Counted from the stretch's first letter, positions 3,677-44,633 are shown. The stretch is DNA of 44,728 nt from Macrostomum lignano (GCA_002269645.1 NIVC01004478.1:1-44728), one strand, 5' to 3'. A program made the numbers and translations. The notes: generated by a model from the letters alone, not told the origin.

Positions 3677-6600
3677 ATGACTAGCTGGATTTGGTGGCTG
3701 CTGGCACTGCTTGTCGTCTCTACATGTCCTGGAAGCCAAGCAGAAGACATGCATGATCACATGCAACATAATATGCATGTTCCTGCTGACCCAGGTGTCC
3801 AGCATGACGGCCACTCCATGCACCATGACCATTCCATGGAGCACGAAAGCGGTTCAACATCGCCCCTAATCGTGCTCATTTTCAATGGACTCCGCTATGA
3901 CCTCCCCGATGTGTATAAGTCTCGCGGCCTCAATTTGTCTAGTTTTGAAATGCTGCTCAAGCAGGGAGTTCGAGCCAGCAAAATGCGCAGCGTGAACCCA
4001 ACTGACTCCATGCCAAACTACTGGAGCATGCTGACTGGCTTGTATCCGGAGAGCCACTGCATCCCCTTCGACTCCTTTCTGGACAGCGACAGGCCTGGCG
4101 TGGTCTTTCACAAGACAAACCTCACCAGCCTCAGCGATGCCGCTTGGTTCTACAAGGGCTTCCCGGAGCCTCTGTGGCTCGCCAACCAGCGGCAAGGCGG
4201 CAAGTCGCTTTTGCTGTTGCCCGGCAAAGCCCTGCTGTTCGGCGGCTCCTCTGGCTCCCCGCAACAGGTGGGCCCAAACAGATAATCAATGTCTGATTGC
4301 AGACTGGGCAGTGCTGTGAGTGTCTGATTGCAGACTGGGCAGTGCTGTGAGTGTCTGATTGCAAACTGGGCAGTGCTGTGAGTGTCTGATTGCAGACTGG
4401 GCAGTGCTGTGAGTGTCTGATTGCAGACTGGGCAGTGCTGTGAGTGTCTGATTGCAGACTGGGCAGTGCTGTGAGTGTCTGATTGCAGACTGGGCAGTGC
4501 TGTGAGTGTCTGATTGCAGACTGGGCAGTGCTGTGAGTGTCTGATTGCAGACTGGACAGTGCTGTGAGTGTCTGATTGCAGACTGGGCAGTGCTGTGAGT
4601 GTCTGATTGCAGACTGGGCAGTGCTGTGAGTGTCTGATTGCAGACTGGACAGTGCTGTGAGTGTCTGATTGCAGACTGGGCAGTGCTGTGAGTGTCTGAT
4701 TGCAGACTGGGCAGTGCTGTGAGTGTCTGATTGCAGACTGGACAGTGCCAGTACAGAATATTCGAAGAATGATGGATTATCTCTGTGCGAGTTATGTTTA
4801 AATGCTCATAGACTACTAGTGATAGGAACTGAATAATTAGTTTGAATAAAGGCTAATTTTGAAACAGCCTAAAGGATCCATCTGAACAATTTGGAAGAAT
4901 ACGATAAACATAACGCTAAAATTGTAGTTTTTATTCACAGTTTGGGTAGGGTAATTTAGTTATATATATATACAGTGGATTTCATTGCACTGCAAATTAT
5001 TTTCGTAAGAGGGATGACTCACCAATCTGAGAAAGTTCTGTGATGCTTGTCATTGTTTTATTGGTCTGTCACTGCCGGTACATGTATAATTGGTTGGCCT
5101 AAGATTCAAGCAGCCTTCGATCGCAAAGCAAAACTGTTTCCCGGCTCTGCAGCTTCTTAGACTTCTGAAAGAAGCGCACAGATGCTGGTATAGATTTGAG
5201 TACTGAGTCATTCCCGATCCCCGCCGGCCTCCAGATCGGCACATCAAGCAACCCGGCCGCCCAGGTGCAGCTTCTGATTGACCTGATGGCGAAGCCGGGC
5301 ACGCATGGCAAGATCAGCTTCGTCCTGATGTACTTTACCGAGCCCGGAGACACCGCGAGAGCTCACGGGCCAGTCAGCAAGGAAGTAGGCGAGAAACTGG
5401 TGGAGCTGGACGGGCATCTGGGCCGGCTGCTTGGCGGCCTTCGACAGCTCGGGATGCTGGACTCCGTCAATCTGGTGGTCACGACTGATCACGGCATGGC
5501 CGCTGTGGACTCCTCCAAGGTGAGCACCTGCATCGAGCGCATCCCGACTGGCTTCATTTTTGGCACTGTTCGGTATCTCACACATTGAAACTTCACAGTC
5601 TCTGGGATCCTCGAAATCAGCCTCCCAGTCCATGCAATGTCTGAGCTGAGTGCCATTACAGCCGTGCCCCTGACTTCACCAATATCCAAGTCAGTGTCTG
5701 AGCTGAGTGCCATTATAGCACCATTCCCCTCAGCATCATTCCCCCAGCATCATTCCCCCAGCATCATTCCCCCAGCATCATTCCCCCAGCATCATTCCCC
5801 CAGCATCATTCTCCCAGCATCATTCCCCCAGCATCATTCCCCCAGCATCATTCCCCAGCATCATTCCCCCAGCATCATTCCCCCAGCATCATTCCCCCAG
5901 CATCATTCCCCTAGCATCACCCCCAGCATCATTCCCCCTAGCATCATTCCCCTCAGCATCATTCCCCTCAGCATCATTCCCCCAGCATCACCCCTAGCAT
6001 CACCCCCAGCATCATTCCCTCAGCATCATTCCCCTCAGCATCATTCCCCAGCATCACCCCTAGCATCACCCCAGCATCACCCCCTAGCATCACCCCCAGC
6101 ATCACCCCCTAGCATCACCCCAGCATCATCCCTAGCATCACCCCCAGCATCATTCCCCAGCATCATTCTCCTCAGAATCATTCCCCCAGCATCATCCCCT
6201 AGCATCACCCCTAGCATCACCCCAGCATCATTCCCCCAGCATCATTCCCTCAGCATCATTCCCCTCAGCATCATTCCCCAGCATCATTCCCCTCAGCATC
6301 ATTCCCCTCAGCATCATTCCCCCAGCATCACCCTAGCATCATTCCCCTCAGCATCATTCCCCTCAGCATCATTCCCCTCAGCATCATTCCCCTCAGCATC
6401 ATTCCCCTCAGCATCATTCTCCCAGCATCACCCCTAGCATCACCCCCAGCATCATTCCCCCAGCATCACCCCCTAGCATCACCCCCAGCATCATTCCCCC
6501 AGCATCACCCCAGCATCATTCCCCCAGCATCACCCCTAGCATCACCCCCAGCATCATTCCCCCAGCATCATTCCCCTCAGCATCATTCCCCTCAGCATCA

Positions 6601-8611
6601 TTCCCCCAGCATCATTCCCCTCAGCATCATTCCCCTCAGCATCATTCCCCCAGCATCACCCCTAGCATCATTCCCCTCAGCATCATTCCCCTCAGCATCA
6701 TTCTCCCAGCATCACCCCCTAGCATCACCCCCAGCATCATTCCCCCAGCATCACCCCCTAGCATCACCCCCAGCATCATTCCCCCAGCATCACCCCCTAG
6801 CATCACCCCAGCATCATTCCCCAGCATCACCCCCTAGCATCACCCCCAGCATCATTCCCCCAGCATCACCCCCTAGCATCACCCCCAGCATCATTCCCCC
6901 AGCATCATTCCCCTCAGAATCATTCCCCCAGCATCACCCCCTAGCATCACCCCCTAGCATCACCCCCAGCATCATTCCCCCAGCATCATTCCCTCAGCAT
7001 CATTTCCCTCAGCATCATTGCCCCAGCATCATTCCCAGCATCACCCCTAGCATCACCCCAGCATCATTCCCCTCAGCATCATTCCCCCAGCATCATTCCC
7101 CTCAGCATCATTCCCCAGCATCACCCCTAGCATCACCCCCTAGCATCACCCCCAGCATCATTCCCCCAGCATCATTCCCCTCAGCATCATTTCCCTCAGC
7201 ATCATTGCCCCAGCATCATTCCCCCAGCATCACCCCCTAGCATCACCCCCAGCATCATTCCCCCAGCATCACCCCCAGCATCATTCCCCCAGCATCACCC
7301 CCTAGCATCACCCCAGCATCATTCCCCCAGCATCATTCCCCTCAGCATCATTCCCCTCAGCATCATTCCCCAGCATCATTCCCCTCAGCATCATTCCCCT
7401 CAGCATCATTCCCCCAGCATCACCCCTAGCATCATTCCCCTCAGCATCATTCCCCTCAGCATCATTCTCCCAGCATCACCCCCTAGCATCACCCCAGCAT
7501 CATTCCCCCAGCATCACCCCCTAGCATCACCCCCAGCATCATTCCCCCAGCATCACCCCCTAGCATCACCCCCAGCATCATTCCCCCAGCATCACCCCCT
7601 AGCATCACCCCCAGCATCATTCCCCAGCATCACCCCTAGCATCACCCCCAGCATCATTCCCCCAGCATCATTCCCCTCAGAATCATTCCCCCAGCATCAC
7701 CCCCTAGCATCACCCCCTAGCATCACCCCCAGCATCATTCCCCCAGCATCATTCCCCTCAGCATCATTTCCCTCAGCATCATTGCCCCAGCATCATTCCC
7801 CAGCATCACCCCCTAGCATCACCCCCAGCATCATTCCCCCAGCATCATTCCCCTCAGCATCATTCCCCATCAGCATCTTTCCTCGGGGAATGATAATCGG
7901 GAACGGGGTACACTGCCTATGCACATTTAAGGCCGAATTGCCTTGAGTTTACTTAGTTTTTATACTCGCTTTGCTGAAATCTTATCTCAGGTGCTCGAGC
8001 TTAACTCGCTGCTCCCAGCTGACTGGTTCAAGAACCGGCTGAACTTGCCCCCTGGTGCGCAGGCACAGCTGTGGCCAAAGGCTGGTCACCAGCCAGCCGA
8101 CCTGATAAACCGCCTGGCCAAATCCAAGACCGAACTCAGCGTTTGGGACGTCACCCACCTGCCTTCAGAGCTGCGCCTTTCCGGCTGCCGCAGGCGCCTC
8201 CCACCTGTCTATGCGCGCGCCAATCCGCCCTGGCTGCTGCGGCTCAGCGCCGGCGCCCCGCTGCCCCTGGGCGTCAGCGGCTACTCGGCCGATACCGAAG
8301 ACATGCGGCCGCTCTGGGTGGCCAGGGGCCCCGACTTTAAGGCCGCCGGAGCTGTGGTGGACCTGCCTCTGGAGTCGGTGGACTTTTACCCGCTGGCCTG
8401 CCAGCTGCTGGGCCTGCAGCCGAAGCCCAACAACGGCTCGCTGGCGCGCATCTCCCCGCTGCTAACTCGCTACATCGGCGGCGAGGGATTCCTGGCCACC
8501 TTCGCCGGCGTGCTGCTGCTGTTCTCCTTCTTCGGCGCCATTCTGATCGTCACCGCCGTCATCACTTCGCGACAGCCCGTCAAGACTGTCAGGGGAGAGC
8601 TTGGGTCCTGA
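3677..8611 (+). CDS. ENPP4/5/6-like nucleotide pyrophosphatase/phosphodiesterase family protein, type I membrane, probably catalytically impaired; 3 exons (3677-4267, 5235-5519, 7991-8611), about 498 aa
   Basis: Signal peptide MTSWIWWLLALLVVSTC. NPP-family motifs: LIFNGLRYD, PTDSMPNYWSMLTGLYPESH, EPLWLANQRQGGKS, YFTEPG, VVTTDHGM, MRPLWVARGPDF, VDFYPLACQLLGLQPKPNNGS. C-terminal hydrophobic helix. All junctions are phase-0 GT-AG. Confidence 0.85.
4291..4748. repeat. 31-bp minisatellite (gtctgattgcagactgggcagtgctgtgagt), about 15 copies, ENPP intron 1
   Basis: Direct tandem copies visible in the sequence. Confidence 0.95.
5718..7880. repeat. C-rich variable 12-14-bp minisatellite (cagcatcattcccc / tagcatcacccc), about 2.2 kb, ENPP intron 2
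   Basis: Interleaved variant units visible in the sequence. Confidence 0.95.
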
Positions 8612-8742
8612 CTAACTGGCTCGGAGATTGAGCCAGATTTTTAGTAGTTATTTTCCATTTGACCGCTTGATTGACACCTGCCACCTAGAAATATGCTGCT
8701 TGCATGAAGCGCAACTGTATGCTGGTCTCTGAGCCACTTGTT

Positions 8743-9838
8743 GAGCGAGTAGCTGAGGTGTCCCATGGTGAGGTGCCTGCAATCAAATTAGCTGAGTGAG
8801 TAGCTGAGGTGTCCCATGGTGAGGTACCTGCAATCAAATTGGCTGAGTGAGTAGCTGAGGTGTCCCATGGTGAGGTGCCTGCAATCAAATTAGCTGAGTG
8901 AGTAGCTGAGGTGTCCCATGGTGAGGTACCTGCAATCAAATTGGCTGAGTGAGTAGCTGAGGTGTGTCCAATGATGAGGTGCCTGCAATCAAATTGGCTG
9001 AGTGAGTAGCTGAGGTGTCCCATGTTGAGGTGCCTGCAATCAAATTGGCTGAGTGAGTAGCTGAGGTGTGTCCCATGATGAGGTGCCTGCAATCAAATTG
9101 GCTGAGTGAGTAGCTGAGGTGTGTCCCATGATGAGGTGCCTGCAATCAAATTGGCTGAGTGAGTAGCTGAGGTGTGTCCCATGATGAGGTGCCTGCAATC
9201 AAATTGGCTGAGTGAGTAGCTGAGGTGTGTCCCATGATGAGGTGCCTGCAATCAAATTGGCTGAGTGAGTAGCTGAGGTGTGTCCCATGATGAGGTGCCT
9301 GCAATCAAATTGGCTGAGTGAGTAGCTGAGGTGTGTCCCATGATGAGGTGCCTGCAATCAAATTGGCTGAGTGAGTAGCTGAGGTGTGTCCCATGATGAG
9401 GTGCCTGCAATCAAATTGGCTGAGTGAGTAGCTGAGGTGTGTCCCATGATGAGGTGCCTGCAATCAAATTGGCTGAGTGAGTAGCTGAGGTGTGTCCCAT
9501 GATGAGGTGCCTGCAATCAAATTGGCTGAGTGAGTAGCTGAGGTGTGTCCCATGATGAGGTGCCTGCAATCAAATTGGCTGAGTGAGTAGCTGAGGTGTG
9601 TCCCATGATGAGGTGCCTGCAATCAAATTGGCTGAGTGAGTAGCTGAGGTGTGTCCCATGATGAGGTGCCTGCAATCAAATTGGCTGAGTGAGTAGCTGA
9701 GGTGTGTCCCATGATGAGGTGCCTGCAATCAAATTGGCTGAGTGAGTAGCTGAGGTGTGTCCCATGATGAGGTGCCTGCAATCAAATTGGCTGAGTGAGT
9801 AGCTGAGGTGTGTCCCATGATGAGGTGCCTGCAATCAA
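8743..9838. repeat. 51-53-bp minisatellite (tgagtgagtagctgaggtgtgtcccatgatgaggtgcctgcaatcaaattggc), about 21 copies, downstream of the ENPP stop
   Basis: Tandem copies; the first units are more variable and the later ones are homogeneous. Confidence 0.95.
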
Positions 9839-10852: not shown

Positions 10853-13800
10853 ATGACAACCCACTGCCACTGGCTCCGCTGTTTCTGGCATCGGCCGAAG
10901 CGCAGGGGATCAGTCGTGGCCTGTCTGAGCGGCCTGTGCGCCTTGACCATGTACTGGCTGGGCTGGGGACCCTTTGCCCCCTGCCAGCCCAGTCTCTCCA
11001 TCACCGAGCAGCTGCAAGACGCCAACCAGACTGTGAGACTCTTCTATAATTGTTGCGATTCACACTATTGTTGTGTAGGCTGAGCTGTGTCCCTGCTGAC
11101 CAAGCTGTGTACCTGCTGACTGAGCTGTGTCCCTGCTGACCAAGCTGTGTACCTGCTGACCAAGCTGTGTCCCTGCTGACCAAGCTGTGTACCTGCTGAC
11201 TGAGCTGTGTCCCTGCTGACCAAGCTGTGTACCTGCTGACCAAGCTGTGTACCTGCTGACCAAGCTGTGTCCCTGCTGACTGAGCTGTGTCCCTGCTGAC
11301 CAAGCTGTGTACCTGCTGACCAAGCTGTGTCCCTGCTGACCAAGCTGTGTACCTGCTGACCAAGCTGTGTCCCTGCTGACCAAGCTGTGTCCCTGCTGAC
11401 TGAGCTGTGTACCTGCTGACCAAGCTGTGTCCCTGCTGACCAAGCTGTGTCCCTGCTGACTGAGCTGTGTCCCTGCTGACTGAGCTGTGTACCTGCTGAC
11501 TGAGCTGTGTACCTGCTGACCAAGCTGTGTCCCTGCTGACTGAGCTGTGTCCCTGCTGCCTGAGCTGTGTCCCTGCTGACTGAGCTGTGTCCCTGCTGAC
11601 TGAGCTGTGTCCCTACTGACCGAGCTGTGTCCTGCTGACTGAGCTGTGTCCCTGCTGACTGAGCTGTGTCCCTGCTGACTGAGCTGTGTCCCTACTGACC
11701 GAGCTGTGTCCCTACTGACCGAGCTGTGTACCTGCTGACTGAGCTGTGTACCTGCTGACTGAGCTGTGTACCTGCTGACTGAGCTGTGTACCTGCTGACC
11801 AAGCTGTGTCCCTGCTGACTGAGCTGTGTCCCTGCTGCCTGAGCTGTGTCCCTGCTGACTGAGCTGTGTCCCTGCTGACTGAGCTGTGTCCCTACTGACC
11901 GAGCTGTGTCCCTGCTGACTGAGCTGTGTCCCTGCTGACTGAGCTGTGTCCCTACTGACCGAGCTGTGTCCCTGCTGACTGAGCTGTGCCATATTTTGAT
12001 ACATTTGCTCATTTGCCAGCATGCAGTGACTGTCAGCGCTCCCCCATGCCAGGTGGTTTACTCGGTGACCGCGGATCACCCGTTCGTCTTCATAGGCGGC
12101 ATGCCCCGCAGCGGGACCACCCTCATGCGGACCATCCTTGACGCGCACTCCGCTGTGCGCTGCGGCGTGGAGACTCGCGTTGTGCCGCGCCTGCTGCAAC
12201 TGCTGACCCGGTGGGAGACCGAGAAGCTCGAGTCGCAGCGGCTGAGGGCGGCCGGCATTTTGGGCCGCCCTCTGGAGGCCGCCACTGCCGCCTTCATCAT
12301 GCAGGTGAGGCTGCGGCGGGAACAGACTAAGTAAGGCACCTTTCCAATGGCAAAAATTCAGCTGGCGGGGTGCCAGGGACTACTTTAATACTGGGTCATG
12401 AAACGACAAAAGCTGGAGGCTTTACCACAGAGTTTTTGTCTGTGGTAAAAAGCAAACCTATTTATCCAATTCATGCTTTTCAAGAATTCGAGATCGGCCT
12501 CTAACACTTGCTGCTTCCCGTCCCTTAGGAGGGCACAGAGCCAGAATTTAGAGGACTTTTCAAGGTTTTTTGGCTGAATTGACTTGTGAATTCGCTTTGG
12601 ATAGAGGTGCCAAACACGTAGTAGGGGAGGGGGGTGTTCTTATCTCGCTTGTGCATTGTTATGAAAACGGGTCTTCGACCACCAAAACTCGCCGTGCAGA
12701 TTCTCATGCGCAATGGGCCGCCGTCACGCCGCCTCTGCGCCAAGGACCCCTACATCATGGCCCACTCGCGCCTGCTCGGCCGACTGTTTCCCAGCGCTAA
12801 GTTCATCCTCATGCTGCGGGATGGACGCGCCTTCGTTCACTCGGCTATCAGCAGGAAGATCCGCATCACCGGGTTTGATCTCAACCGGCCCATGGACTGC
12901 CTGGCCAGGTGGAATGCCCAGGTTTGTTGAAGTGCCCGATGGGGTGCTGAGCCAAAACTGTAGGGTATTAGCTCGCAATGTATGATCGTGTCAATTGTGT
13001 CAGTAGCTGTAGGGTATTAGCTCGCAATGTATGATCGTGTCAATTGTGTCAGTAGCTGTAGGGTATTAGCTCGCAATGTATGATCGTGTCAATTGTGTCA
13101 GTAGCTGTAGGGTATTAGCTCGCAATGTATGATCGTGTCAATTGTGTCAGTAGCTGTAGGGTATTAGCTCGCAATGTATGATCGTGTCAATTGTGTCAGT
13201 AGCTGTAGGGTATTAGCTCGCAATGTATGATCGTGTCAATTGTGTCAGTAGCTGTAGGGTATTAGCTCGCAATGTATGATCGTGTCAATTGTGTCAGTAG
13301 CTGTAGGGTATTAGCTCGCAATGTATGATCGTGTCAATTGTGTCAGTAGCTGTAGGGTATTAGCTCGCAATGTATGATCGTGTCAATTGTGTCAGTAGCT
13401 GTAGGGTATTAGCTCGCAATGTATGATCGTGTCAATTGTGTCAGTAGCTGTAGGGTATTAGCTCGCAATGTATGATCGTGTCAATTGTGTCAGTAGCTGT
13501 AGGGTATTAGCTCGCAATGTATGATCGTGTCAATTGTGTCAGTAGCTGTAGGGTATTAGCTCGCAATGTATGATCGTGTCAATTGTGTCAGTAGCTGTAG
13601 GGTATTAGCTCGCAATGTATGATCGTGTCAATTGTGTCAGTAGCTGTAGGGTATTAGCTCGCAATGTATGATCGTGTCAATTGTGTCAGTAGCTGTAGGG
13701 TATTAGCTCGCAATGTATGATCGTGTCAATTGTGTCAGTAGCTGTAGGGTATTAGCTCGCAATGTATGATCGTGTCAATTGTGTCAGTAGCTGTAGGGTA

Positions 13801-16800
13801 TTAGCTCGCAATGTATGATCGTGTCAATTGTGTCAGTAGCTGTAGGGTATTAGCTCGCAATGTATGATCGTGTCAATTGTGTCAGTAGCTGTAGGGTATT
13901 AGCTCGCAATGTATGATCGTGTCAATTGTGTCAGTAGCTGTAGGGTATTAGCTCGCAATGTATGATCGTGTCAATTGTGTCAGTAGCTGTAGGGTATTAG
14001 CTCGCAATGTATGATCGTGTCAATTGTGTCAGTAGCTGTAGGGTATTAGCTCGCAATGTATGATCGTGTCAATTGTGTCAGTAGCTGTAGGGTATTAGCT
14101 CGCAATGTATGATCGTGTCAATTGTGTCAGTAGCTGTAGGGTATTCGCTCGCAATGTATGATCGTGTCAATTGTGTCAGTAGCTGTAGGGTATTAGCTCG
14201 CAATGTATGATCGTGTCAATTGTGTCAGTAGCTGTAGGGTATTAGCTCGCAATGTATGATCGTGTCAATTGTGTCAGTAGCTGTAGGGTATTAGCTCGCA
14301 ATGTATGATCGTGTCAATTGTGTCAGTAGCTGTAGGGTATTAGCTCGCAATGTATGATCGTGTCAATTGTGTCAGTAGCTGTAGGGTATTAGCTCGCAAT
14401 GTATGATCGTGTCAATTGTGTCAGTAGCTGTAGGGTATTCGCTCGCAATGTATGATCGTGTCAATTGTGTCAGTAGCTGTAGGGTATTAGCTCGCAATGT
14501 ATTATCGTGTCAATTGTGTCAGTAGCTGTAGGGTATTAGCTCGCAATGTATGATCGTGTCAATTGTGTCAGTAGCTGTAGGGTATTAGCTCGCAATGTAT
14601 GATCGTGTCAATTGTGTCAGTAGCTGTAGGGTATTAGCTCGCAATGTATGATCGTGTCAATTGTGTCAGTAGCTGTAGGGTATTCGCTCGCAATGTATGA
14701 TCGTGTCAATTGTGTCAGTAGCTGTAGGGTATTAGCTCGCAATGTATGATCGTGTCAATTGTGTCAGTAGCTGTAGGGTATTAGCTCGCAATGTATGATC
14801 GTGTCAATTGTGTCAGTAGCTGTAGGGTATTCGCTCGCAATGTATGATCGTGTCAATTGTGTCAGTAGCTGTAGGGTATTCGCTCGCAATGTATGATCGT
14901 GTCAATTGTGTCAGTAGCTGTAGGGTATTCGCTCGCAATGTATGATCGTGTCAATTGTGTCAGTAGCTGTAGGGTATTAGCTCGCAATGTATGATCGTGT
15001 CAATTGTGTCAGTAGCTGTAGGGTATTAGCTCGCAATGTATGATCGTGTCAATTGTGTCAGTAGCTGTAGGGTATTAGCTCGCAATGTATGATCGTGTCA
15101 ATTGTGTCAGTAGCTGTAGGGTATTAGCTCGCAATGTATGATCGTGTCAATTGTGTCAGTACACTGTAATTCCTAAAGGTCCGAAGAAGGGTCCGGGAAA
15201 GGTCCATTGTGGAGGGTCCGGAGCGTCGAAATAACGGACCATGAAAGGTCCGTATTTTGATGGGTCCGTATTGTAAAGTCCGTATTGCAAGGTCCGTATT
15301 TTGAAAGGTCCGTATTTTGAAAGGTCCCTATTGCAAAGTCCATATTTTTCAGATGTCCGCATTATGGGTCCGAAATATAAAAACGATTACACCCCAAAAT
15401 GTATTCACTTGATCTGCAAGACACAAAATACCCACTATTATAGGTATGAATTTTATGAATTTCCTTACCTGTAAAATTGTTCCCAATTACATTATGTGAG
15501 GCATACAATGTTGTCAGTCATTGCGCTCAATTTAAGAAAAGTAAGAAGTGAAGCATTCGTAATCAACAATTGCATGTTTATGAAGGATGTTAACCAATTT
15601 AAAGTATTTTTTATGGTATATAAAGATTGATCCTAAAATATTTATTGTTGTAGTACAAAAACAGTGGTAATAATAATATTTAGTAATTATTTGTTGCACA
15701 TTACACATTGCGAATAAGTGTTTGCTTTGGTCACTCAAAGAGTGAAGTTGAATATACAGACTAAAAAGCACAAACTAAATACACAGGGCAATAAATAAGC
15801 AGCCAACATCGCCGTGACCCTCTGATGACAGATAACACTCTATGATTATGATTGTGAATATGAAAATAAATATTGTGATTGTGATTAGGCTTGTGATTAC
15901 GATTAATTCACAGTCATATTCAATCGTACTAACATGAAAATGAATATAATTATTATAAAAATGAAAATGATTACAATAGTCATGTCTAGGCGTTATAAAA
16001 TCATCTAACGAAGTGCATCCAAAATAGCTACTGCAGCCTTGCGGACGGCTTTCTTGCGAAGGCCCGACAGCACTTCGATTACCTCCAGAAACGCCTCTAG
16101 GGCAGGGAGGTGCTGGAGGTTGAACGCGATGAAGACAATTACAAATGCAATTATCGAGTCAGTAACACTGTCGAATGGGATGCTCGCACCGTTGACGAAA
16201 ACGCCGCACCATTTTCCATCCTCTGTCAGAATTCTGACTGGTAGTGCGTCGCGAAGAATAATAGACGGGTCGACTCGCAACCGACCGAGAAGAAGAAAGA
16301 CAGCCACAGGCAGCTTGTCCTCCTCTGAAACAACTGGCAATTCCACATAATCCTTGCACAGCTTGAAATTTTTTAGCAACTGCCTTTTACTGTACACAAG
16401 CAACAAGGCGTTAATAATCCTGCTTCTCATTTCCGATGGACTTGGTGGAAGTACATAGTCAGTTTTGCTTCTGTTGTATGTCTGGATCATGAGATACGCC
16501 TCCTGCTGCAGTACTGCGATGTTTACCAGTGGCGCAATTTCGTCACTAACCGTCAAATCTTGGCACCGCAATATTCGAATCGGAAACAGAGCCTGCATTT
16601 CGTTGAGAACGTCTGATATTGAAGAGTCATGATGAGTCTCGTTCAATCTCGTTCGACGAGCTTCGTGTGACGGTGGTACATCGGTATCGAACTCGCCGAA
16701 GTCAACGCTCTTCGCCATTGCACTGCCAGCATCGTATGCATCACTATCATCATCGCCTTCTTCTTCGATCAGATCTTCGTCGTCGTTGATACGCTGCTTG

Positions 16801-19800
16801 TTGGCTCTTTTAGCACGTGAAGCTATAATTTCATTGTCGTCATCATCTTCCTGGCCTTCAACTTCCTTGTACTGCCGTTTATGCCTTTGGCTCACAGTAA
16901 CCGCACTTGGGCCTGCAGCAGCTGCAGCAGCATTTGGTAGAATTATACGCCGATGACCAAGTCGACCATGCTTCCGTCGCATCTCCTGAACCGTTGGGCT
17001 GCTCTTGTCGACAAAGTCGCCAACGAACCGGAGCTCTTTGAAACGCCGAATAAGCTTTTGGCGCCAAAAGCTTGAGCTCCCACTTAATGAGGTGTCCTTC
17101 AGTCCAGGATACGAAGTTACTATGGAAGTGCACACATCTGTTATCTGGCTAGATGACAGGTATGGTTCATTTGGCGACAGATAGTTCAAACAGATGTGAT
17201 CGACGATGAATTTAAGGAACTTGTTGACAAACGTCGCGTTCATTTTTAAATCGGAACCCTTTTCGGGGTGCATTCGTAGATCACGAAGGGCGTTGGCGAG
17301 ATCGTCCATTCGTGGAAGCGAGTACACTTCGGGCCATGGAAGTGTAGTTGCAGCCGTAGCTGCTACAGCTGGATTTGGACTCAGAGCCTGTGTGCCTCGA
17401 CTCGGTGTTGTGGCAATCTCGACATTGCGTATTTCGCTTTGCTGCTTTGGTGTAGTTGAAGGTTCTACAGGGCATGCACCGCAGCTTGGAAGCAACTCTC
17501 CAGAAAGAAGGAAGTACACAGTTCTACATTCCTTTGCCACCTCCGATATTAAATCATCGTCGTCGATTTCGAAACCGTCAGAAGTGACAATGCGAACATT
17601 TTCAACATCTGCAATGTCCAATTTTAAACAACCTTTGATGCGAAGGTCCGCCAAGGTCAGGCCAGAAGCTGGAAGGAGCTTCTTGCGCTCCTCTGAGCCG
17701 TTGCAGATTCGAAGCTGAAATGAGGTATGATGTGCACAACCTCAATCAGAATACATCTGGTAAGACACAGATAAAATGAATTTATAAAGCCAAGGAATTC
17801 TTGTTCATTATGATTTTTCGGCTTTTGTCCTTGGCTTGACTTAATGTAGTAGTAGTAGTAGTAGTAGTAGTTAATTGGCTTGGGCAAGTAGTGCCCGTTA
17901 TGTTAATAGAGTGTATTTAATTAGATATGAATAACTTAGTGTTAACAAAAGTTGTCAATAATGGACAATACAATTTAAACAGTAGAAGTTTTTGCATTAG
18001 ATCAATGCCTTTAAGTTGCTGTGAGATGGCTTTCTTCCAAGGATCAATTGGATTGTCATTGTTGTTAAAGAGACTAGTGGTAGTAGAGTTAGCTTTAAAT
18101 AAGTTTTAACCAGAAAAGGAGGTACCTTTTCTTAATGATTTCAGAAATAGGAAGAATGTTGAGTTCATTGAGTATGACTTTATTGCTTGTATGTATGCTC
18201 TGGTAGATTAAGAATTTAAGGAGAGACTTATAGAATTTCAATTGAATATTATCCAGATCCTTAATTTTTGATTGCCTGGCCAGTGGACCCCATACCTTGC
18301 AGCCATAAGTAATGACTGTGACAACAAAATGTTTAGTGTTTTTATGATGTTTTTGTTTTTTTGTTGCTTTTTTCTGAACAATCTTCACTCTTCAATACTA
18401 AAAGCTGAAGCTTCAACAAGCTTAGACAGAGGATGAACCCATTTTAGGCAAGAAATGGTTCGAAAACCTGCACCATCTACATAGAACTAGCCTAGTCAAG
18501 GAAGGGCAAGCCGACCTATCATAAAAAGGTTAGACACCTATAGGCCAGAAATCTATGTAAGGTGGAGAGCACAGTTCCTTGTGCTAGAGGCAAGGTGGCC
18601 CTTGTAATAATTTGTTATTTTATGAAGTGCAAGTGTATGCCATATTGTTATATGCTTAAATTTATCTAAAATGATACCCACTAAGATTGTAGATTATTGA
18701 TCAATGTTTTGGCAATGTAGCATTGGATAATATTTTAAAGAAAGAAAAAGTTTCCCTTGATACATTAAAAATGGAATTGGCTGATGAAAAAAGTGCTGAG
18801 TAGGTTCAATAAATACTAAATGGTCATTATTCACAGTGCATATAAAACTGCTATAATGACAAGAAAATTTAGCATTCACTTTTTTACAAATAATTATCCA
18901 CTTGTTGGAAAGTTGAATAATATGGCTAATTAATGCTAAAGCAATTCCAGTTGGTTCTAAAATTGGCAAACAATAACGGTAATTTAATGTTGGAGTCCGA
19001 TATACAAACCCCTGATATTTTAGTTCATTAGTAGAAAGACAAATAGTGCCAATAATTGAGTCTGTATCTAAATTCATGTTGTTGCATAACTCAGTTTGTT
19101 CATCTATTGTCAATAGCATATTTAAGCTAATAGGATTTATATTATGGCTCTTAATTGTACCTGGTTCATAGTGCTTAATGATAAGTGCCTTTTGAATTTG
19201 ATATTGTTTTGCACATGTATAGGCAGGATTTTTGAAATTTCTTGCATGCCTGTTTATATTCTTAAGCAATTGATGATGAGCTTCACCTCGCATACACCAT
19301 AAGTATTTAAGACCACTATAATAATGATAAAATTCAGGATAGTGACATATATAATGCAATTTACATTTATATTTAGGATTGAAGCCCGTGTTTCTATATA
19401 TTAATTCTAATTGGCCAGAAATAAGAGATTGAAAATATTCTAAGTTTATGCTACTATCATATGGGGACAAAATTATGTCAAGAAACTGCCTGTGACAATT
19501 AAATAATATCCAAATATCATCATCCAACTCAAACAAATGTCCAAATAAAAGTCCAAAGTATTGTAGAATAACAATTATTTGATTAGAAGTACATGGTAGA
19601 TGATAATTTTGTAAGTGATATTTATTTATTGTAGGAATACTGACTTCTTTAATCAAATTTAGTTGTTTGTTTATATAGTCTATACTAATATTATGATTTT
19701 GAATAATACTTAATAGAATAATACATATAACAACATGAGAAAACCCTTCAAACACATCATGCATTATATCAGGGGGGAAAAATATTGAAAGTTAATATAT

Positions 19801-22800
19801 GCTACACTTCTAAACACAGATGGTGAAATTAAACCATTACTTAAGGATTTAAAATCTTCAATATATGATGAATTATCTCGATATTCAAATAGGAATAATG
19901 TACTTAATTCTTCTAATCTAATGCTACAAAGCTGTTTATAACCTATAAAACAAAATCTACAAATATAACCACTTGAAAACCAAGTTTGCATACCTAACAT
20001 TCTATGTATTGATAAATTATCCCCAGTCATGAAAGCAGCAATAACAGGCATTTTTATCAAATTACTTATTTGAAATTCTTCAAAGTAAAGCTCATTCAGC
20101 TCTCTAATTAATGGAAATAAACAAAACTGTAAACCTTTCTTTTTAACATTTGAATCATTAAATACTGTTAAAAGAAAATATAAGTCTGAAGATGAACTAA
20201 GATATTCAGGGAAATTAAGAATAGTAAAGTATACTACACATAATTTATGTTTTGTTTTGGCAGACCCAATAGGATTACATATTTCAATTTCATCTGAATA
20301 AAGTTTTATGAATATACCATTCTTATTTGTTAACAATGGACTAATATGTTCTTCAAAATAAGTAGACTTGAAAAAAAAATTTTCTTTGTTGGTTGCATTT
20401 AAATAAGAATTTGTAATAATATACTTAAGCAATGTCTCATTTTTTATAATAGAACTAAGTGTTTCTTTTATTGGAATATATAGAATTTTTAATTTTGATT
20501 CTTCATCTATGATTTCAATGGGCTCAACAAAATTAAACTTGTTTTGTAAAATTTCAAATATTTTTTTATTACTTAATAGATGCTCTAATGAAAGGTCAAT
20601 CATTTCTTGCAAATTTAATTTATTTTTATAAGAATTATAGCTGTTAACTATTGAAGGACATTCTTCTTTTAAAAATTGCTCAAATAACAAAAAATAGTCA
20701 TCAGCAAACTTCAATACTATTTCCTTAACAAGTTCACATAATTGATTAGATTTGCTTTTAGGAATTAAAAAGAAATGTCTAGACTTTAGATAAAAGTAAA
20801 CAAAATTTTCAGCAAGATGTTTTCTTGTATTTTCACATAAAAAATCACTAGACATTTCAAATTCAGGGTCTTTTTTTTCATTTTCAACTTGGTTACAAAT
20901 AGTAGATAATATGGCTATATCTATAGGCACAGCTTGCAATTCATTTTCTAAAGGGTTTCCTAATAAGTCTAGAGTAGGGTTATTATGAACACAATTTGGC
21001 TGTAGAACTTGGTCTTGGGAAAAATTATCAACAACACTGTTTTTGTGCATACGATAGGCATGTGCTTGTAATCCTTCAATTGTAACACTAATATGGTAAC
21101 ATCCCCTAACTGGACATAAAAAATTGCTATTCCCAAAAGAATGGTATAGTTTTATATGACTTATAAGCTTAAATAAATCCTTGTGTGTATGAAGACATAT
21201 ACTACATTGAAATAGTTTTGAAATTACATTTTCATCTCCATTTAACATATCCTGGACAGTGGATAAGCCTACTAAATTCGTCGTTGTGGAATGGACAACG
21301 CGTAAAAACGTTTAAAAAGCACTAATTTTTAGGTTTGATCAGAACGAATTGCACGCAACAATCTAAATGTTCGAAGTTAGTAGAGTGAAACAAAAGTTCC
21401 CAACATATTTTTGATCTGTGTTAGAAATGCGCTTGTACCTTTTAAAAGGAATACAATATATAATTCCTTTAATTTAAGGCATTTAGAGCTTTCGATTGAT
21501 GCAATTACATTTGACGGATAATTTTATTTGTGTTTTTATGCGGCAAAAAATACGGTGGTATAAAACCTAAATTTATTTCCAGTCCGATTTTCTCTATAAA
21601 ATCTCGCGTGTGCTTAAAAAAATATCATTTGAGGGCACTTGAAAAAATTTCATTCGTTTTCTCTGACCAAAAAAATCGGACCTTCAGACATGAAGGTCCG
21701 CCTTCAGGCATGAAGGTCCGCATTATGCAATTCGGACCTTATCCGGACCCATAAGATTTACAGTGTAGCTGTAGGGTATTAGCTCGCAATGTATGATCGT
21801 GTCAATTGTGTCAGTAGCTGTAGGGTATTAGCTCGCAATGTATGATCGTGTCAATTGTGTCAGTAGCTGTAGGGTATTAGCTCGCAATGTATGATCGTGT
21901 CAATTGTGTCAGTAGCTGTAGGGTATTAGCTCGCAATGTATGATCGTGTCAATTGTGTCAGTAGCTGTAGGGTATTAGCTCGCAATGTATGATCGTGTCA
22001 ATTGTGTCAGTAGCTGTAGGGTATTCGCTCGCAATGTATGATCGTGTCAATTGTGTCAGTAGCTGTAGGGTATTAGCTCGCAATGTATTATCGTGTCAAT
22101 TGTGTCAGTAGCTGTAGGGTATTAGCTCGCAATGTATGATCGTGTCAATTGTGTCAGTAGCTGTAGGGTATTAGCTCGCAATGTATGATCGTGTCAATTG
22201 TGTCAGTAGCTGTAGGGTATTAGCTCGCAATGTATGATCGTGTCAATTGTGTCAGTAGCTGTAGGGTATTAGCTCGCAATGTATGATCGTGTCAATTGTG
22301 TCAGTAGCTGTAGGGTATTAGCTCGCAATGTATGATCGTGTCAATTGTGTCAGTAGCTGTAGGGTATTAGCTCGCAATGTATGATCGTGTCAATTGTGTC
22401 AGTAGCTGTAGGGTATTAGCTCGCAATGTATGATCGTGTCAATTGTGTCAGTAGCTGTAGGGTATTAGCTCGCAATGTATGATCGTGTCAATTGTGTCAG
22501 TAGCTGTAGGGTATTAGCTCGCAATGTATGATCGTGTCAATTGTGTCAGTAGCTGTAGGGTATTAGCTCGCAATGTATGATCGTGTCAATTGTGTCAGTA
22601 GCTGTAGGGTATTAGCTCGCAATGTATGATCGTGTCAATTGTGTCAGTAGCTGTAGGGTATTAGCTCGCAATGTATGATCGTGTCAATTGTGTCAGTAGC
22701 TGTAGGGTATTCGCTCGCAATGTATGATCGTGTCAATTGTGTCAGTAGCTGTAGGGTATTAGCTCGCAATGTATGATCGTGTCAATTGTGTCAGTAGCTG

Positions 22801-27190: not shown

Positions 27191-30100
27191 TCAGTGGAAT
27201 TCCTCACCAGAGGCCGCGAAATCCGCGCAGCTGTCCATGGCCTGCCTGACCTCCGCTTTGAGGGAGAAAGGTCGGAACATGTAGCCGGCCCCCGAGTAGA
27301 ACTTGGACTGGAACTCAATCCTGTGAAGGGCAGGGTGCAAGGCAGTGAGCAGCCTATTCTCTGTAGAGTTCAGCCAAACTGAGCCACACACTACAGCCAG
27401 ACCGCTGAGTTTGGCTGAGCTGGGTTCCCCTGTCGCTTGCGGTCATCTCACATGAGCTTTAATTAGGGCTCTCACAGGGGCTTCTGGGCGCTCACAGGGG
27501 CTTTTGACCGCTCACATGGGCTTTAGGGCGCTCACATGGACTTTAGGGCACTCACAAGGGCTTTGCATGGGGCGCTCACATGGATGGGCTTACATGGATG
27601 GGCTTTAGGGCTCTCACAGGGGCTTTGGGGCGCTCACATGGCCTTTAGGGCTCTCACATAAGCTTTAGGGCGGTCACATGGGCTTTATTTAGGGCTCTCA
27701 CATGGGCTTTAGGGCGCTCACACGGGCTTTGGAGCTCTCACAGGGGCTTTCGGGCGCTCACAGGGGCTTTTGCAGGCGTTGCCGCAAGGCGACCCCGCAG
27801 CCAGCGAGGAGCCAATTGCAGTCACACTCCTGCAGATTACTTTAGCCGCACACCTATACGGAATGGCACTCGGCTACGTACGCAGGCACACACTCTCCGT
27901 GAATGAAGGGAATGTGGCTGCGAGCGGAATCGAACCCAAAGACTTTAGTGAAAGTCAGACGCAATGCAGCTCGCTAGAAGCCCCTCCACCAGACTCACCA
28001 GTGCAACCGCAGCGAGTGCAGCAGGGCCGTCATGCCCTCCATGCCAACCAGGATGCACACTGTGATGCAGGCCCACAGGCAGAAGCTGGCCGCCAGGGTA
28101 AGGCCACCCAGCAGCAGGGCGGCTGTGGGACTGGCAGCCAGCAGATCCGCCAGGCGGGTGGGCGGCATCAGCAGCATCGGCCACATGATCGCCGTCAGCT
28201 CTGCCGGCGGGTGAAGAGGACTTGAGAGATAAGTGCTTGAGGCGGAATCACAGGGCACGGCATGGCACAAACACAAACTCCAGTGCACATCATGGCATAA
28301 ACACAAACTCCAGTGCACAGCATGGCATAAACACAAACTCCAGTGCACAGTATGGCATAAACACAAACTCCAGTGCACATCATGGCATAAACACAAACTC
28401 CAGTGCACAGCATGGCATAAACACAAACTCCAGTGCACAGTATGGCATAAACACAAACTCCAATGCACAGTATGGCATAAACACAAACTCCAGTGCACAG
28501 CATGGCATAAACACAAACTCCAGTGCACAGTATGGCATAAACACAAACTCCAGTGCACATCATGGCATAAACACAAACTCCAGTGCACAGTATGGCATAA
28601 ACACAAACTCCAATGCACAGTATGGCATAAACACAAACTCCAGTGCACAGTATGGCATAGAAACAGAAGCTTTCCTGCTTCTATTTATTCCAAAGCTGTT
28701 AGTCTGGCAGCCGTCACCTCCGTGCGCAAGTCCGATGGCCCACAGTCGCAGGTAGGAGGCCGAATGCGACAGCGAGCTGAGCAAGAACTCAAAGCAGGCC
28801 AGGCAGTGCTCAAGCAGGTCGAACTGCTTCTCCCCGTGAGCACAGTCCAGCGGCTCCGGCTCGAGCTTCGGCAGCGACTTTCCTCGACTGCCGGAGTTGC
28901 TGGACGATGACAGGGGCGTCAGCGGCATCGCCGAGTCAGACTTGCCCCTGCCAATCTCCTCTTCTTCGCGGTCTCCGGGGACGTCGGTGGCTGCAGCCGT
29001 CAGTTTCTGTTCCGCCTTCGCCTTGGAGCTGCTACTGCCTCTACTGGTCAGCGCATGGTGGATCGGCAACCCGAAGATGGCGAGCAGAGCGCTGGCCGCT
29101 ACGCCGGCTACAATGGCGTGCTCCACGTAGCGCTGCGGGCGGGCGGGCATTGGGTTGGGAGGGCTCGTGGCTTCTGAATGCAGACTGGTCGCTTAGAGTG
29201 ACCGTGGGATCTGTGTACCCAAAAGACCATGATGGGGCTAGCATCCCCCCCATGGACCATGATGGGACCAGCATCCCCAATAGACCATGATGGGATCAGC
29301 ATCCCCAATAGACCATGATGGGACCAGCATCCCCAATAGACCATGATGGGACCAGCATCCCCAATAGACCATGTGGGATCAGCATTCCTCAATAGACCAT
29401 GATGGGATCAGCATCCCCAACAGACCATGATGGGACCAGCATCCCCAATAGACCATGTGGAATCAGCATTCCTCAATAGACCATGATGGGATCAGCATCC
29501 CCAACAGACCATGATGGGACCAGCATCCCCAATAGACCATGTGGAATCAGCATTCCTCAATAGACCATGATGGGATCAGCATCCCCAACAGACCATGATG
29601 GGACCAGCATCCCCAATAGACCATGTGGGATCAGCATCCCCAATAGACCATGATGGGACCAGCATCCCCAACAGACCATGATGGGACCAGCATCCCCAAC
29701 AGACCATGATGGGATCAGCATCCCCAACAGACCATGATGGGATCAGCATCCCCAACAGACCATGATGGGATCAGCATCCTCAATAGACCATGATGGGACC
29801 AGCATCCCCAATAGACCATGATGGGATCAGCATCCCCAACAGACCATGATGGGATCAGCATCCCCAATAGACCATTATGGGATCAGCGTCCCCAATATTA
29901 GTGCAGAGCTCACCCACCTGTCCGGAATAGTAGGTGGCCAGGTAGCAAGGTGTCTCCGTGTACTCCAGGCGGTACATGGCGATCAGCATGGGCAGCAGGG
30001 CGGGAGCGCAGGCGGCATCGCGGGGCAGCACGGCCAGCCACTTGCGCAGGATGAGGGCCACGGGGTAGCCCGTCAGCAGGCAGTGGAAGGCCATCTTGGC

Positions 30101-44321: not shown

Positions 44322-44620
44322 CCATTCGGACTCAATACAGCGACAGCACAACCCTGTGTTTGTCAGGTACGAGTTCCGGCACTGCACGCAGCAAACTGGC
44401 GAGTCACTGAACGCCTGGACCCAGCGCCACGTCAGCAGCAGCGAGGGGTGCGAAGTTCGGTCGCAGCGCGACTTGCTCATCCGAGACCAAATAGTGGCCG
44501 GCTGCAGATCCGCCAGCTCCGGCGGACACTCCTGCAAAACTCGCAACATCAGCCTCGAGGACGCACTGCAGCAAGCAAGAGCCTTCGAGGCGGCGAACTT
44601 CAGTCAGCAGCCATCGAAGC
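44322..44620 (+). pseudogene. Ty3/Gypsy gag fragment, decayed
   Basis: NPVFVRYEFRHCTQQTGES...CEVRSQRDLLIRDQIVAG...LEDALQQARAFEAA fits the retrotransposon gag pattern. The expected RQLRRTLLQ segment lies in another frame, implying compensating frameshifts. Confidence 0.72.
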
Positions 44621-44633
44621 GCGGAACAACGAG

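What the first reader, a model, noticed from the sequence alone, without database searches (positions are those of the whole stretch)
3677..8611. Intact ENPP gene that appears to have lost most catalytic zinc ligands (candidate pseudoenzyme)
Known: NPP enzymes bind two Zn through Asp (xDG), Asp and His (EPDxxGH), Asp-His (xDHG) and a late His (HGY), with a Thr or Ser nucleophile. Seen: FNG (D to N, codon 3884-3886), EPGDTARAHGP (D to G, H to R by direct alignment) and VSGYS (H to S); only DHG, a Ser nucleophile position and the PN motif remain. The frame, signal peptide and TM helix are intact. Inference: a surface protein repurposed as a non-catalytic nucleotide or lipid binder, receptor or scaffold. 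Caveat: a shifted Asp and His in EPGDTARAH might partly compensate.
Basis: partly seen in the sequence, partly recalled or inferred. Interest (0 to 1): 0.7.

Follow-up and report, generated by a model that had tools for sequence, protein, structure and literature searches.

The report
Flatworm ENPP-like protein lacking one zinc site
This is an intact, selectively maintained Macrostomum lignano gene for a membrane-anchored relative of ENPP5-type phosphodiesterases that has lost one of its two catalytic zinc sites and its nucleotide clamp, so it is very probably no longer a normal phosphodiesterase, which is moderately interesting rather than startling.

Summary
Window 3677-8611 (+) is a three-exon gene of the flatworm Macrostomum lignano. 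It encodes a 498/507-aa type I membrane protein with a confident NPP/ENPP5-like fold.

In 118 homologues every zinc-ligand column is 97-100% conserved. This protein has N70, G235, R239 and S388 in place of Asp, Asp, His and His. It also has Thr->Ser at the nucleophile, Asn->Asp at the phosphate-binding Asn, and neither aromatic residue of the base clamp.

The same residues occur in a second genomic copy and in a 69%-identical orthologue mRNA from another sample (dN/dS 0.26). They are therefore neither sequencing errors nor decay. The "shifted Asp/His" compensation is not supported.

The pattern is specific. All three Zn1 ligands are gone, while the nucleophile-side site (N, S, D-H) largely remains. 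New conserved D110, C128 and D132 sit beside it.

- **Best reading (about 0.55):** a lineage-specific pseudoenzyme, or binding module, derived from a flatworm ENPP5-like ectoenzyme. It carries a new His/Met-rich N-terminal tail.
- **Main rival (about 0.25):** a remodelled single-metal enzyme.

Nucleotide binding in the canonical mode is unlikely. Similar independent losses occur in coral, sea-urchin, tick, hemichordate and fluke ENPP-like genes. My searches found no paper describing them.

The parts
3677..4267 (+). Exon 1 (aa 1-197): signal peptide, His/Met-rich tail, and the first half of the NPP domain
   Evidence: ORF plus GT donor at 4268. Matches NCBI model P0001.
3677..3742 (+). Predicted signal peptide (aa 1-22, MTSWIWWLLALLVVSTCPGSQA)
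   Evidence: Read from the sequence. The AF2 model has helix 3-15 followed by a disordered stretch. The cleavage site is inferred.
3743..3850 (+). His/Met-rich acidic tail (aa 23-58; 10 His and 5 Met in 36 aa), predicted disordered
   Evidence: Composition. pLDDT is below 50 for residues 18-54. The last ~15 aa are conserved in the orthologue mRNA L001 (GHSMHEGHSMEHE). The tail is absent from the intact paralogue P0135.
3884..3886 (+). N70, at the Zn2 Asp position (xDG -> FNG)
   Evidence: AAT codon. The column is D in 115/118 homologues.
4004..4012 (+). D110-S111-M112: Ser at the Thr nucleophile position, flanked by a new Asp (usually Lys or an aliphatic residue) and by Met in place of the base-stacking Phe
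   Evidence: Identical in P0002.
4058..4072 (+). C128 to D132 (HCIPFD): Gly->Cys, plus Asn->Asp at the phosphate-binding Asn
   Evidence: G in 116/118 and N in 114/118 homologues. Both changes are shared with P0002.
4268..5234 (+). Intron 1, holding a 31-bp x14.8 tandem array (4290-4748)
   Evidence: The array length differs in the second copy, L002.
5235..5519 (+). Exon 2 (aa 198-292); an alternative in-frame acceptor at 5208 would add 9 aa
   Evidence: The first codon, I198, occupies the aromatic-clamp Tyr/Phe column (Y 81, F 33 of 118).
5346..5360 (+). G235 to R239 (EPGDTAR): the Zn1 Asp and Zn1 His are replaced
   Evidence: D in 116/118 and H in 117/118 homologues. P0002 has EPGAAAR.
5487..5492 (+). 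D282-H283 (DHG): Zn2 ligands retained
   Evidence: Invariant in all 121 aligned sequences.
5520..7990 (+). Intron 2, almost filled by a 14-bp x161 C-rich tandem array (5717-7882)
   Evidence: The exon 2/3 junction is continuous in the orthologue mRNA L001.
7991..8611 (+). Exon 3 (aa 293-498 plus stop)
   Evidence: AG acceptor at 7989-7990.
8276..8278 (+). S388, at the late Zn1 His position (HGY -> SGY)
   Evidence: AGC codon. H in 117/118 homologues.
8489..8566 (+). Predicted transmembrane helix (aa 459-484)
   Evidence: Hydrophobic stretch lying within AF2 helix 456-485. Conserved in P0002.
8567..8608 (+). Short cytoplasmic tail SRQPVKTVRGELGS, conserved in the orthologue (SRRPAKTVRGELGP)

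Best explanation
The gene is a duplicate of a flatworm ENPP5-like ecto-phosphodiesterase gene that arose in the Macrostomum lineage. It encodes a type I membrane protein that keeps the NPP fold but cannot carry out the canonical two-zinc nucleotide phosphodiester hydrolysis.

**What has changed in the active site.**
- All three ligands of the leaving-group zinc (Zn1) are gone: D->G235, H->R239, H->S388.
- The Asp of the other site is Asn (N70).
- The phosphate-binding Asn is Asp (D132).
- Both aromatic residues that clamp the nucleobase are aliphatic (M112, I198).

**What maintains it.** The protein is held by purifying selection, and the remodelled pocket is its most conserved part. That pocket comprises N70, D110, S111, C128, D132, R239 and D282-H283.

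**Most likely role.** It works as a non-hydrolytic, or at most feebly hydrolytic, surface binding or receptor module. Its pocket would recognise a ligand other than a nucleotide. R239 occupies the place of the lost zinc-binding His.

**Added element.** A lineage-specific His/Met-rich N-terminal tail probably binds divalent metal.

**Shown versus inferred.** Shown: gene structure, fold, residue replacements, their conservation, selection, and origin by duplication. Inferred: loss of activity, topology, ligand binding, and metal binding by the tail.
For: - **Family and fold.** Pfam PF01663 at E 2.7e-43. AF2 model with pLDDT 87.4 and pTM 0.82. Best Foldseek matches are ENPP5 structures 5veo/5ven, with TM-score 0.88 normalised to the target.
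- **Ligand columns.** They are 97-100% conserved in 118 homologues but replaced here, in paralogue P0123 and in orthologue P0002.
- **Targeted change.** Of the 12 columns that are at least 90% conserved and changed in both orthologues, 8 are active-site positions. 38 of the 52 such columns are kept overall.
- **Aromatic clamp.** Both clamp residues are lost.
- **Experimental yardstick.** In mouse ENPP1, D200A, D358A and H517A are each inactive on ATP and cGAMP (PMC9173814). These correspond to N70, G235 and S388.
- **Selection.** dN/dS is 0.26 over 442 codons against the orthologue mRNA L001, with dS 0.875. Residues within 6 positions of the former active-site residues are 80% identical, against 63% for the rest of the domain (p = 0.006).
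- **Origin.** In an NJ tree the gene is sister to the M. lignano paralogue P0135, whose ligand columns are intact as far as that 251-aa fragment reaches, in 180/200 bootstraps. The trematode ENPP5-like proteins branch next. Relative-rate tests suggest faster evolution on this lineage, for example 42 versus 14 unique changes (p = 2e-4) with outgroup P0131.
- **His-rich tail.** Its C-terminal part is conserved in the orthologue, and the tail is absent from the paralogue.
Against: - No activity or metal-content measurement exists.
- Only two species carry the gene in the databases searched, so site-wise selection cannot be tested.
- The nucleophile (Ser) and the D-H pair are conserved, and new D110, C128 and D132 sit beside them. 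That is also what a remodelled catalytic site would look like.
- In ENPP1 the His equivalent to R239 is dispensable for ATP hydrolysis, so that single change is not diagnostic.
- Active-site motifs lie in the protein core, so their higher conservation is weak evidence for function.
- Relative-rate tests were significant with only some outgroups.
- dN/dS between the two genomic copies is uninformative (7 synonymous and 9 non-synonymous differences).
Confidence: 0.55

Rival explanations
1. It is a remodelled single-metal enzyme. The protein would keep a functional nucleophile-activating site (N70, S111, D282, H283, perhaps with D110, C128 and D132 and a Ca/Mg/Zn ion). R239 would take the place of Zn1 in stabilising the phosphoryl or leaving group. 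Single-metal members of the alkaline-phosphatase superfamily work this way (arylsulfatases, phosphonate monoester hydrolases, LtaS/EptA-type transferases; from established knowledge). On this reading it acts on a non-nucleotide phospho- or sulfo-ester.
For: - The losses are selective: all three Zn1 ligands are gone, while the Ser nucleophile and D-H are strictly kept in both orthologues.
- New acidic and Cys residues conserved in both orthologues lie next to the nucleophile.
- SVNPTDSMPNYWSMLTGLYP is 100% identical between the orthologues.
- H->R at the same column recurs independently in the Diadema P0130 and tick P0078 proteins.
Against: - The acidic ligand of the retained site is itself changed to Asn. 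No natural precedent for that in an active member is known to me.
- D200A, at the equivalent position in ENPP1, is dead.
- H->R, D->G and D->N are each single transitions, so recurrence may reflect mutational ease.
- There is no Pfam hit to the sulfatase or metalloenzyme families at E <= 0.01.
- Nothing has been tested biochemically.
Confidence: 0.25
2. It is still a canonical two-zinc NPP, with neighbouring residues standing in as ligands (D236 and H241 in EPGDTARAH).
For: D236 and H241 lie one and two residues downstream of the lost ligands (alignment).
Against: - D236 is Ala in the orthologue.
- At the columns of H241 and D236, His occurs in 16/118 and Asp in 28/118 homologues as ordinary non-ligand residues.
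- Nothing replaces H388 or D70.
- The aromatic clamp and the phosphate-binding Asn are also lost.
Confidence: 0.05
3. It is a decaying pseudogene, or the substitutions are assembly or sequencing errors.
For: - One annotated copy (P0124, Mlig026797g4) has a frameshifted C-terminus.
- The introns are full of unstable tandem arrays.
Against: - The window copy has an intact ORF with canonical splice sites.
- Identical ligand residues occur in an independently assembled copy (L002, GCA_002269645.1) and in a spliced mRNA contig from another sample at 69% identity.
- dN/dS is 0.26.
- 38 of 52 family-conserved columns are kept.
Confidence: 0.03

Closest known systems
Vertebrate ENPP5 and ENPP4 (structures 5VEN/5VEM and 4LQY)
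   Same: - Best sequence and fold matches: E 1e-35 and 2.6e-35; TM-score 0.87-0.88 normalised to the target.
- A single NPP domain without the somatomedin or nuclease-like domains.
- N-terminal signal peptide and C-terminal membrane anchor.
   Different: - About 25-28% identity.
- Four of the six Asp/His zinc ligands are replaced.
- Thr->Ser at the nucleophile.
- The phosphate-binding Asn is Asp.
- The aromatic base clamp is lost.
- An extra His/Met-rich N-terminal tail is present.
Flatworm ENPP5-like ectoenzymes: the M. lignano paralogue A0A1I8INJ6 (P0135), Paragonimus ENPP5-like proteins, and the Schistosoma mansoni tegumental SmNPP5 (PMC7549896, as listed)
   Same: - The closest intact relative is P0135: 42% identity over the stretches matched by phmmer, and sister in 180/200 bootstraps.
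- The overall ENPP5-like architecture matches that of the full-length trematode relatives P0129 and P0131, each with a C-terminal hydrophobic stretch.
- SmNPP5 is described as a surface ectoenzyme.
   Different: - P0135 has the ligands intact in every column that its 251-aa fragment covers.
- SmNPP5 is described in the abstracts listed as an active nucleotide pyrophosphatase/phosphodiesterase. Its sequence was not compared here.
- The window protein lacks the Zn1 site.
Other ligand-degenerate ENPP4/5/6-like proteins of invertebrates: Acropora P0157, Diadema P0130, tick P0078, Saccoglossus P0192, Paragonimus P0129
   Same: - Same family.
- Partial loss of zinc ligands.
- Acropora shares N, S, M and D at columns 70/111/112/132.
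- Diadema shares G and R at columns 235/239.
   Different: - They do not group with the window gene in the tree, so the losses look independent.
- Each has a different set of losses.
- All are database-annotated as active enzymes, and none is characterised as far as my literature searches show.
Single-metal members of the alkaline-phosphatase superfamily (arylsulfatases, PMH, LtaS/EptA)
   Same: They work with only the nucleophile-side metal site, with basic side chains in place of the second metal (established knowledge). The retained N/S/D-H set plus R239 resembles this arrangement.
   Different: - A different subfamily.
- No sequence-family match here.
- Their first ligand is acidic, not Asn.
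- The resemblance is a lead, not a tested result.

Membership tests
NPP/ENPP family (Pfam PF01663, type I phosphodiesterase / nucleotide pyrophosphatase) | Sequence match to the family profile above the curated threshold | tested here: met
   149.3 bits against a cut-off of 23; E 2.7e-43; covers profile positions 1-340 of 342.
NPP/ENPP family | NPP catalytic-domain fold | tested here: met
   AF2 pLDDT 87.4 and pTM 0.82. Foldseek against ENPP5/3/1/4 and Xac NPP gives E about 1e-33 to 1e-31, with target TM-scores of 0.84-0.88 for the single-domain members.
NPP/ENPP family (as active enzymes) | Complete bimetal site: Asp (xDG), Asp and His (D-x3-H), Asp-His (DHG), and a late His (HGY) | tested here: not met
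   N70, G235, R239 and S388 replace four of the six ligands; only D282-H283 are kept.
NPP/ENPP family (as active enzymes) | Thr/Ser nucleophile followed by the F-P-N motif | tested here: inconclusive
   S111 is present (T in 115/118 homologues, S in 1/118). P113-N114 are kept, but Phe is Met.
NPP/ENPP family (as active enzymes) | Phosphate-binding Asn (N111 in Xac NPP, N277 in human ENPP1) | tested here: not met
   D132 here and in P0002; N in 114/118 homologues.
Nucleotide-specific NPPs (ENPP1, 3, 4, 5) | Aromatic clamp for the nucleobase (Phe after the nucleophile plus a Tyr about 36 residues before the Zn1 Asp) | tested here: not met
   M112 (F in 113/118 homologues). I198 here and L in P0002 (Y or F in 114/118).
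ENPP4/5-type architecture | A single NPP domain with a signal peptide and a C-terminal transmembrane anchor (type I) | tested here: met
   Hydrophobic N-terminus and C-terminal helix 456-485 in the model. No other Pfam domain. The topology itself is predicted, not measured.
Pseudoenzyme (operational definition) | Homologue of an active enzyme family that lacks residues required for catalysis | tested here: met
   In ENPP1, alanine mutants at three of the equivalent positions are inactive.
Pseudoenzyme | Maintained by selection rather than decaying | tested here: met
   dN/dS 0.26 against the orthologue, and an intact ORF in two genomic copies. Only one orthologue is available.
Pseudoenzyme | Demonstrated absence of catalytic activity | not testable with these tools
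   Needs a recombinant protein assay.
Single-metal alkaline-phosphatase-superfamily enzymes (sulfatase / LtaS / EptA type) | One metal held by an acidic residue, the nucleophile and an Asp-His/Asn pair, with basic residues in place of the second metal | tested here: inconclusive
   S111, D282, H283 and R239 fit. The acidic residue is Asn70. There is no Pfam match to PF00884 or PF01676 at E <= 0.01.

The most novel reading that the evidence does not exclude
ENPP4/5-like ectodomains that have lost the Zn1 site, often with Arg at the former His, would form a recurrent and so far unrecognised functional class in invertebrates. Candidates come from Macrostomum, sea urchin, ticks, coral and hemichordate. 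On this reading they are single-metal or metal-free phosphate- or cation-recognising surface receptors. In Macrostomum the class would be coupled to a His/Met-rich metal-capturing tail, making the protein a surface metal or phospho-ligand sensor rather than a hydrolase.
Probability: 0.15. Interest if true: 0.6.

Novelty: new variant of a known kind. Interest (0 to 1): 0.4.

Why it matters
**Enzymology.** ENPP enzymes control extracellular nucleotide, lipid and cGAMP signalling, and in parasitic flatworms an ENPP5 homologue is a surface virulence enzyme. A naturally occurring, selectively maintained ENPP that has lost one whole metal site but kept the other is a ready-made natural experiment. 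It bears on how two-metal alkaline-phosphatase-superfamily enzymes turn into single-metal enzymes or binding proteins.

**Annotation.** Genome annotation currently labels such proteins as active enzymes. Examples are the "bis(5'-adenosyl)-triphosphatase enpp4-like" proteins of Acropora and Diadema and the "ENPP6-like" proteins of ticks.

**Tractability.** M. lignano is an established laboratory flatworm. To my knowledge RNAi and transgenesis are available for it, so the function is experimentally accessible.

**Limit.** Pseudoenzymes exist in most enzyme families, so the finding is useful rather than startling.

Tried and rejected
- **More orthologues.** I ran a word-indexed search with the protein, an exhaustive HMMER search of 1.84 billion representatives, and a profile search with the two orthologues. 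Only the M. lignano cluster and one Logan mRNA contig (P0002/L001, SRR28338165) were found, so site-wise codon tests are not possible.
- **Literature.** I searched for ENPP or alkaline-phosphatase-superfamily pseudoenzymes, for the M. lignano gene identifiers and for the SRA run. Nothing relevant turned up. The species of SRR28338165 could not be established.
- **dN/dS between the two genomic copies.** With 7 synonymous and 9 non-synonymous differences, there are too few changes to be informative.
- **Shifted-ligand compensation.** Rejected.
- **Orthology with the Acropora protein.** That protein shares N/S/M/D at four columns, but orthology is rejected by the tree, in which the window gene groups with M. 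lignano's own paralogue P0135 (ligands intact in the columns its fragment covers).
- **First NJ attempt.** The Biopython run timed out and was redone in numpy.
- **Model coordinates.** Distances between R239, C128, D110, D132 and S111 could not be measured.
- **Fusion with the downstream sulfotransferase.** The UniProt model P0125 makes this fusion. I rejected it as a gene-model artefact or read-through, because the orthologue mRNA ends at the same stop codon and is followed by about 90 nt with no open frame.


Full report
**What is there.**

The interval 3677-8611 holds a three-exon gene on the + strand with GT-AG introns.
- Exon 1 is 3677-4267.
- Exon 2 is 5235-5519. An in-frame alternative acceptor at 5208 would add nine residues.
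- Exon 3 is 7991-8611, including the stop.

The product is 498 aa, or 507 aa with the alternative acceptor. The window is Macrostomum lignano DNA. The NCBI protein PAA47351.1 (P0001, "hypothetical protein BOX15_Mlig026797g6") is 98% identical, and five further models fall in the same 90% cluster. Both introns are largely tandem arrays: 31 bp x15 and 14 bp x161.

**Family and fold.**

Pfam gives a single hit, PF01663 Phosphodiest (E 2.7e-43, full length). The closest solved structures by sequence are ENPP5 (1e-35) and ENPP4 (2.6e-35), ahead of ENPP3, ENPP1, ENPP7, bacterial NPP and ENPP6. An AlphaFold2 model built on 121 sequences is confident (pLDDT 87.4, pTM 0.82). Residues 18-54 are disordered, and the model has a C-terminal helix at 456-485. 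Foldseek places it on ENPP5 (5veo/5ven) with a TM-score of 0.88 normalised to the target. The predicted architecture is:
- signal peptide
- His/Met-rich tail
- NPP domain
- transmembrane helix
- 14-residue cytoplasmic tail

I aligned the protein with 118 homologues at 23-31% identity, drawn from bacteria, fungi and animals. The ligand columns are almost invariant in those homologues:

| Position | Role | Homologues (of 118) | This protein |
|---|---|---|---|
| 70 | Zn2 Asp | D in 115 | N |
| 111 | nucleophile | T in 115 | S |
| 132 | phosphate-binding Asn | N in 114 | D |
| 235 | Zn1 Asp | D in 116 | G |
| 239 | Zn1 His | H in 117 | R |
| 282-283 | Zn2 Asp-His | D-H in 118 | D-H |
| 388 | late Zn1 His | H in 117 | S |

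- Neither residue of the nucleobase clamp is aromatic. The Phe after the nucleophile is M112, and the Tyr/Phe about 36 residues before the Zn1 Asp is I198 (L in the orthologue).
- The invariant Gly before the Asn loop is C128.

Of the 52 columns that are at least 90% conserved in the family, the protein keeps 38. Of the 12 changed in both orthologues, eight are active-site positions. The change is thus targeted at the active site while the scaffold is preserved.

**Not an error and not decay.**

A second genomic copy (L002, GCA_002269645.1) differs at 16 coding positions, 7 synonymous and 9 non-synonymous. It has all the same active-site residues, and its intron arrays differ greatly in length.

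A spliced mRNA contig from another sample (L001, Logan SRR28338165) encodes a 69%-identical orthologue, P0002. It carries FNG, PTDSMPN, HCVPFD, EPGAAARAHGP, DHG and GVSGY. Nei-Gojobori dN/dS between the two is 0.26 (dS 0.875, 442 codons).

D236 is Ala in the orthologue. At the columns of H241 and D236, His (16/118) and Asp (28/118) are ordinary residues at non-ligand positions.

**Origin.**

An exhaustive profile-free search found the nearest relative beyond the orthologue to be M. lignano's own paralogue A0A1I8INJ6 (P0135). It is a 251-aa fragment, 42% identical over the matched stretches, with the ligands intact in every column it covers. In an NJ tree of 91 sequences the window protein plus P0002 are sister to P0135 in 180 of 200 bootstraps. 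The trematode ENPP5-like proteins branch next.

Relative-rate tests show more unique changes on the window lineage than on P0135 with every outgroup (1.3- to 3-fold). The difference is significant with some outgroups (p = 2e-4 with P0131) and not with others. The gene is therefore a lineage-specific duplicate, apparently faster-evolving, of a flatworm ENPP5-like gene.

**How it most likely works.**

The pattern of loss is specific. By established NPP and alkaline-phosphatase structural knowledge, D-x3-H plus the late His hold Zn1 (leaving-group side). The first Asp, the nucleophile and the D-H pair hold Zn2 (nucleophile side).
- All three Zn1 ligands are gone here.
- Zn2 keeps S111, D282 and H283, with Asn in place of Asp.

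In mouse ENPP1, alanine substitution of D200, D358, D405, H406 or H517 abolishes activity on ATP and cGAMP. H362A keeps ATP activity (PMC9173814). The window protein is therefore changed at three individually essential positions (70, 235, 388). Together with the lost Asn and aromatic clamp, canonical two-metal nucleotide hydrolysis is very unlikely.

The pocket is nevertheless the best-conserved part of the protein. Identity is 80% within 6 residues of the sites against 63% elsewhere (p = 0.006), and residues 105-124 are identical between the orthologues. The pocket has also gained conserved D110, C128 and D132.

My best reading (0.55) is a retained, non-hydrolytic surface binding or receptor module with a remodelled pocket. 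R239 occupies the place of the lost zinc-binding His. The main rival (0.25) is a remodelled single-metal enzyme of the kind known elsewhere in the alkaline-phosphatase superfamily. The two can be separated only by assay and metal analysis.

The N-terminal tail has 10 His and 5 Met in 36 residues. Its C-terminal part is conserved in the orthologue, and it is absent from the paralogue. It probably binds divalent metal; this is an inference.

**Comparison with what is known.**

The protein passes the sequence, fold and architecture tests for the ENPP family. It fails the tests that define an active NPP: the bimetal site, the Asn and the nucleotide clamp.

Ligand-degenerate ENPP-like proteins also exist elsewhere. 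The letters below give the residues at the columns of 70, 111, 112, 132, 235, 239, 282, 283 and 388.
- Acropora: N S M D Y Q D H H
- Diadema: D T F N G R D H D
- ticks: Q P Y D A R D H H
- Saccoglossus
- Paragonimus

They do not group with the Macrostomum gene, so the losses look independent. All are annotated as active enzymes. Full-text searches found no paper describing ENPP or alkaline-phosphatase-superfamily pseudoenzymes.

**Verdict.**

This is a new variant of a known family and an instance of a well-known phenomenon, the pseudoenzyme. It has two interesting twists: selective deletion of one metal site, and recurrence across phyla. Interest is 0.4.

Noticed in passing
window 4290-4748, 5717-7882, 8742-9838; L002 introns: The ENPP-like gene is embedded in tandem arrays. 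Intron 1 holds 31 bp x15, and each unit contains GTGAGT and TTGCAG splice-like words. Intron 2 holds 14 bp x161 and is strongly C-skewed. A 53 bp x21 array lies just 3' of the stop. Array lengths differ greatly in the second genomic copy (intron 1: 967 vs 2524 bp; intron 2: 2471 vs 391 bp).
   Followed up: partly
window 11966-12334 and 24925-25398 (+), with 12958-15161 and 21765-24953: A downstream tyrosylprotein-sulfotransferase-like gene (Pfam PF13469/PF00685) has exons separated by about 12.6 kb. That interval holds two arrays of the same 49-bp satellite, which flank an AT-rich insert.
   Followed up: partly
window 16005-21248 (-): An AT-rich segment (GC about 0.30) carries three long ORFs (549, 356 and 494 aa) with no Pfam hit. 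It sits between the two halves of the 49-bp satellite and is probably a transposable element inserted into the array.
   Followed up: partly
P0125 (UniProt A0A1I8FTX6) vs window 3677-25398; L002 8942-10412: One public gene model fuses the ENPP-like protein and the sulfotransferase into an 883-aa protein. The NCBI models keep them separate. The same gene order recurs at the second copy, so read-through or co-transcription is possible.
   Followed up: partly
window ~28560-32123 (-): Exons of a V-type ATPase subunit a gene (Pfam PF01496, E 3.4e-51), interrupted by several short-period tandem arrays.
   Followed up: no
window ~34977-41996 (+): A fibrillar collagen gene: long Gly-X-Y ORFs in a GC-rich (0.6-0.68) region, and a COLFI C-terminal domain at 41673-41996.
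   Followed up: no
window 42247-44321: A 25-bp x81 tandem array. It is followed by a 122-aa ORF (44272-44640) with no Pfam hit.
   Followed up: no
P0157 (Acropora), P0130 (Diadema), P0078 (ticks), P0192 (Saccoglossus), P0129 (Paragonimus), P0010: Independent ENPP4/5/6-like proteins with partly lost zinc ligands, all annotated as active enzymes. H->R at the Zn1 His column recurs in Macrostomum, Diadema and ticks.
   Followed up: partly
P0124 (PAA60000.1, Mlig026797g4): One annotated M. lignano copy has a frameshifted C-terminus after residue ~425 and so loses the transmembrane helix. It could be a degenerate copy, an isoform or an assembly error.
   Followed up: no
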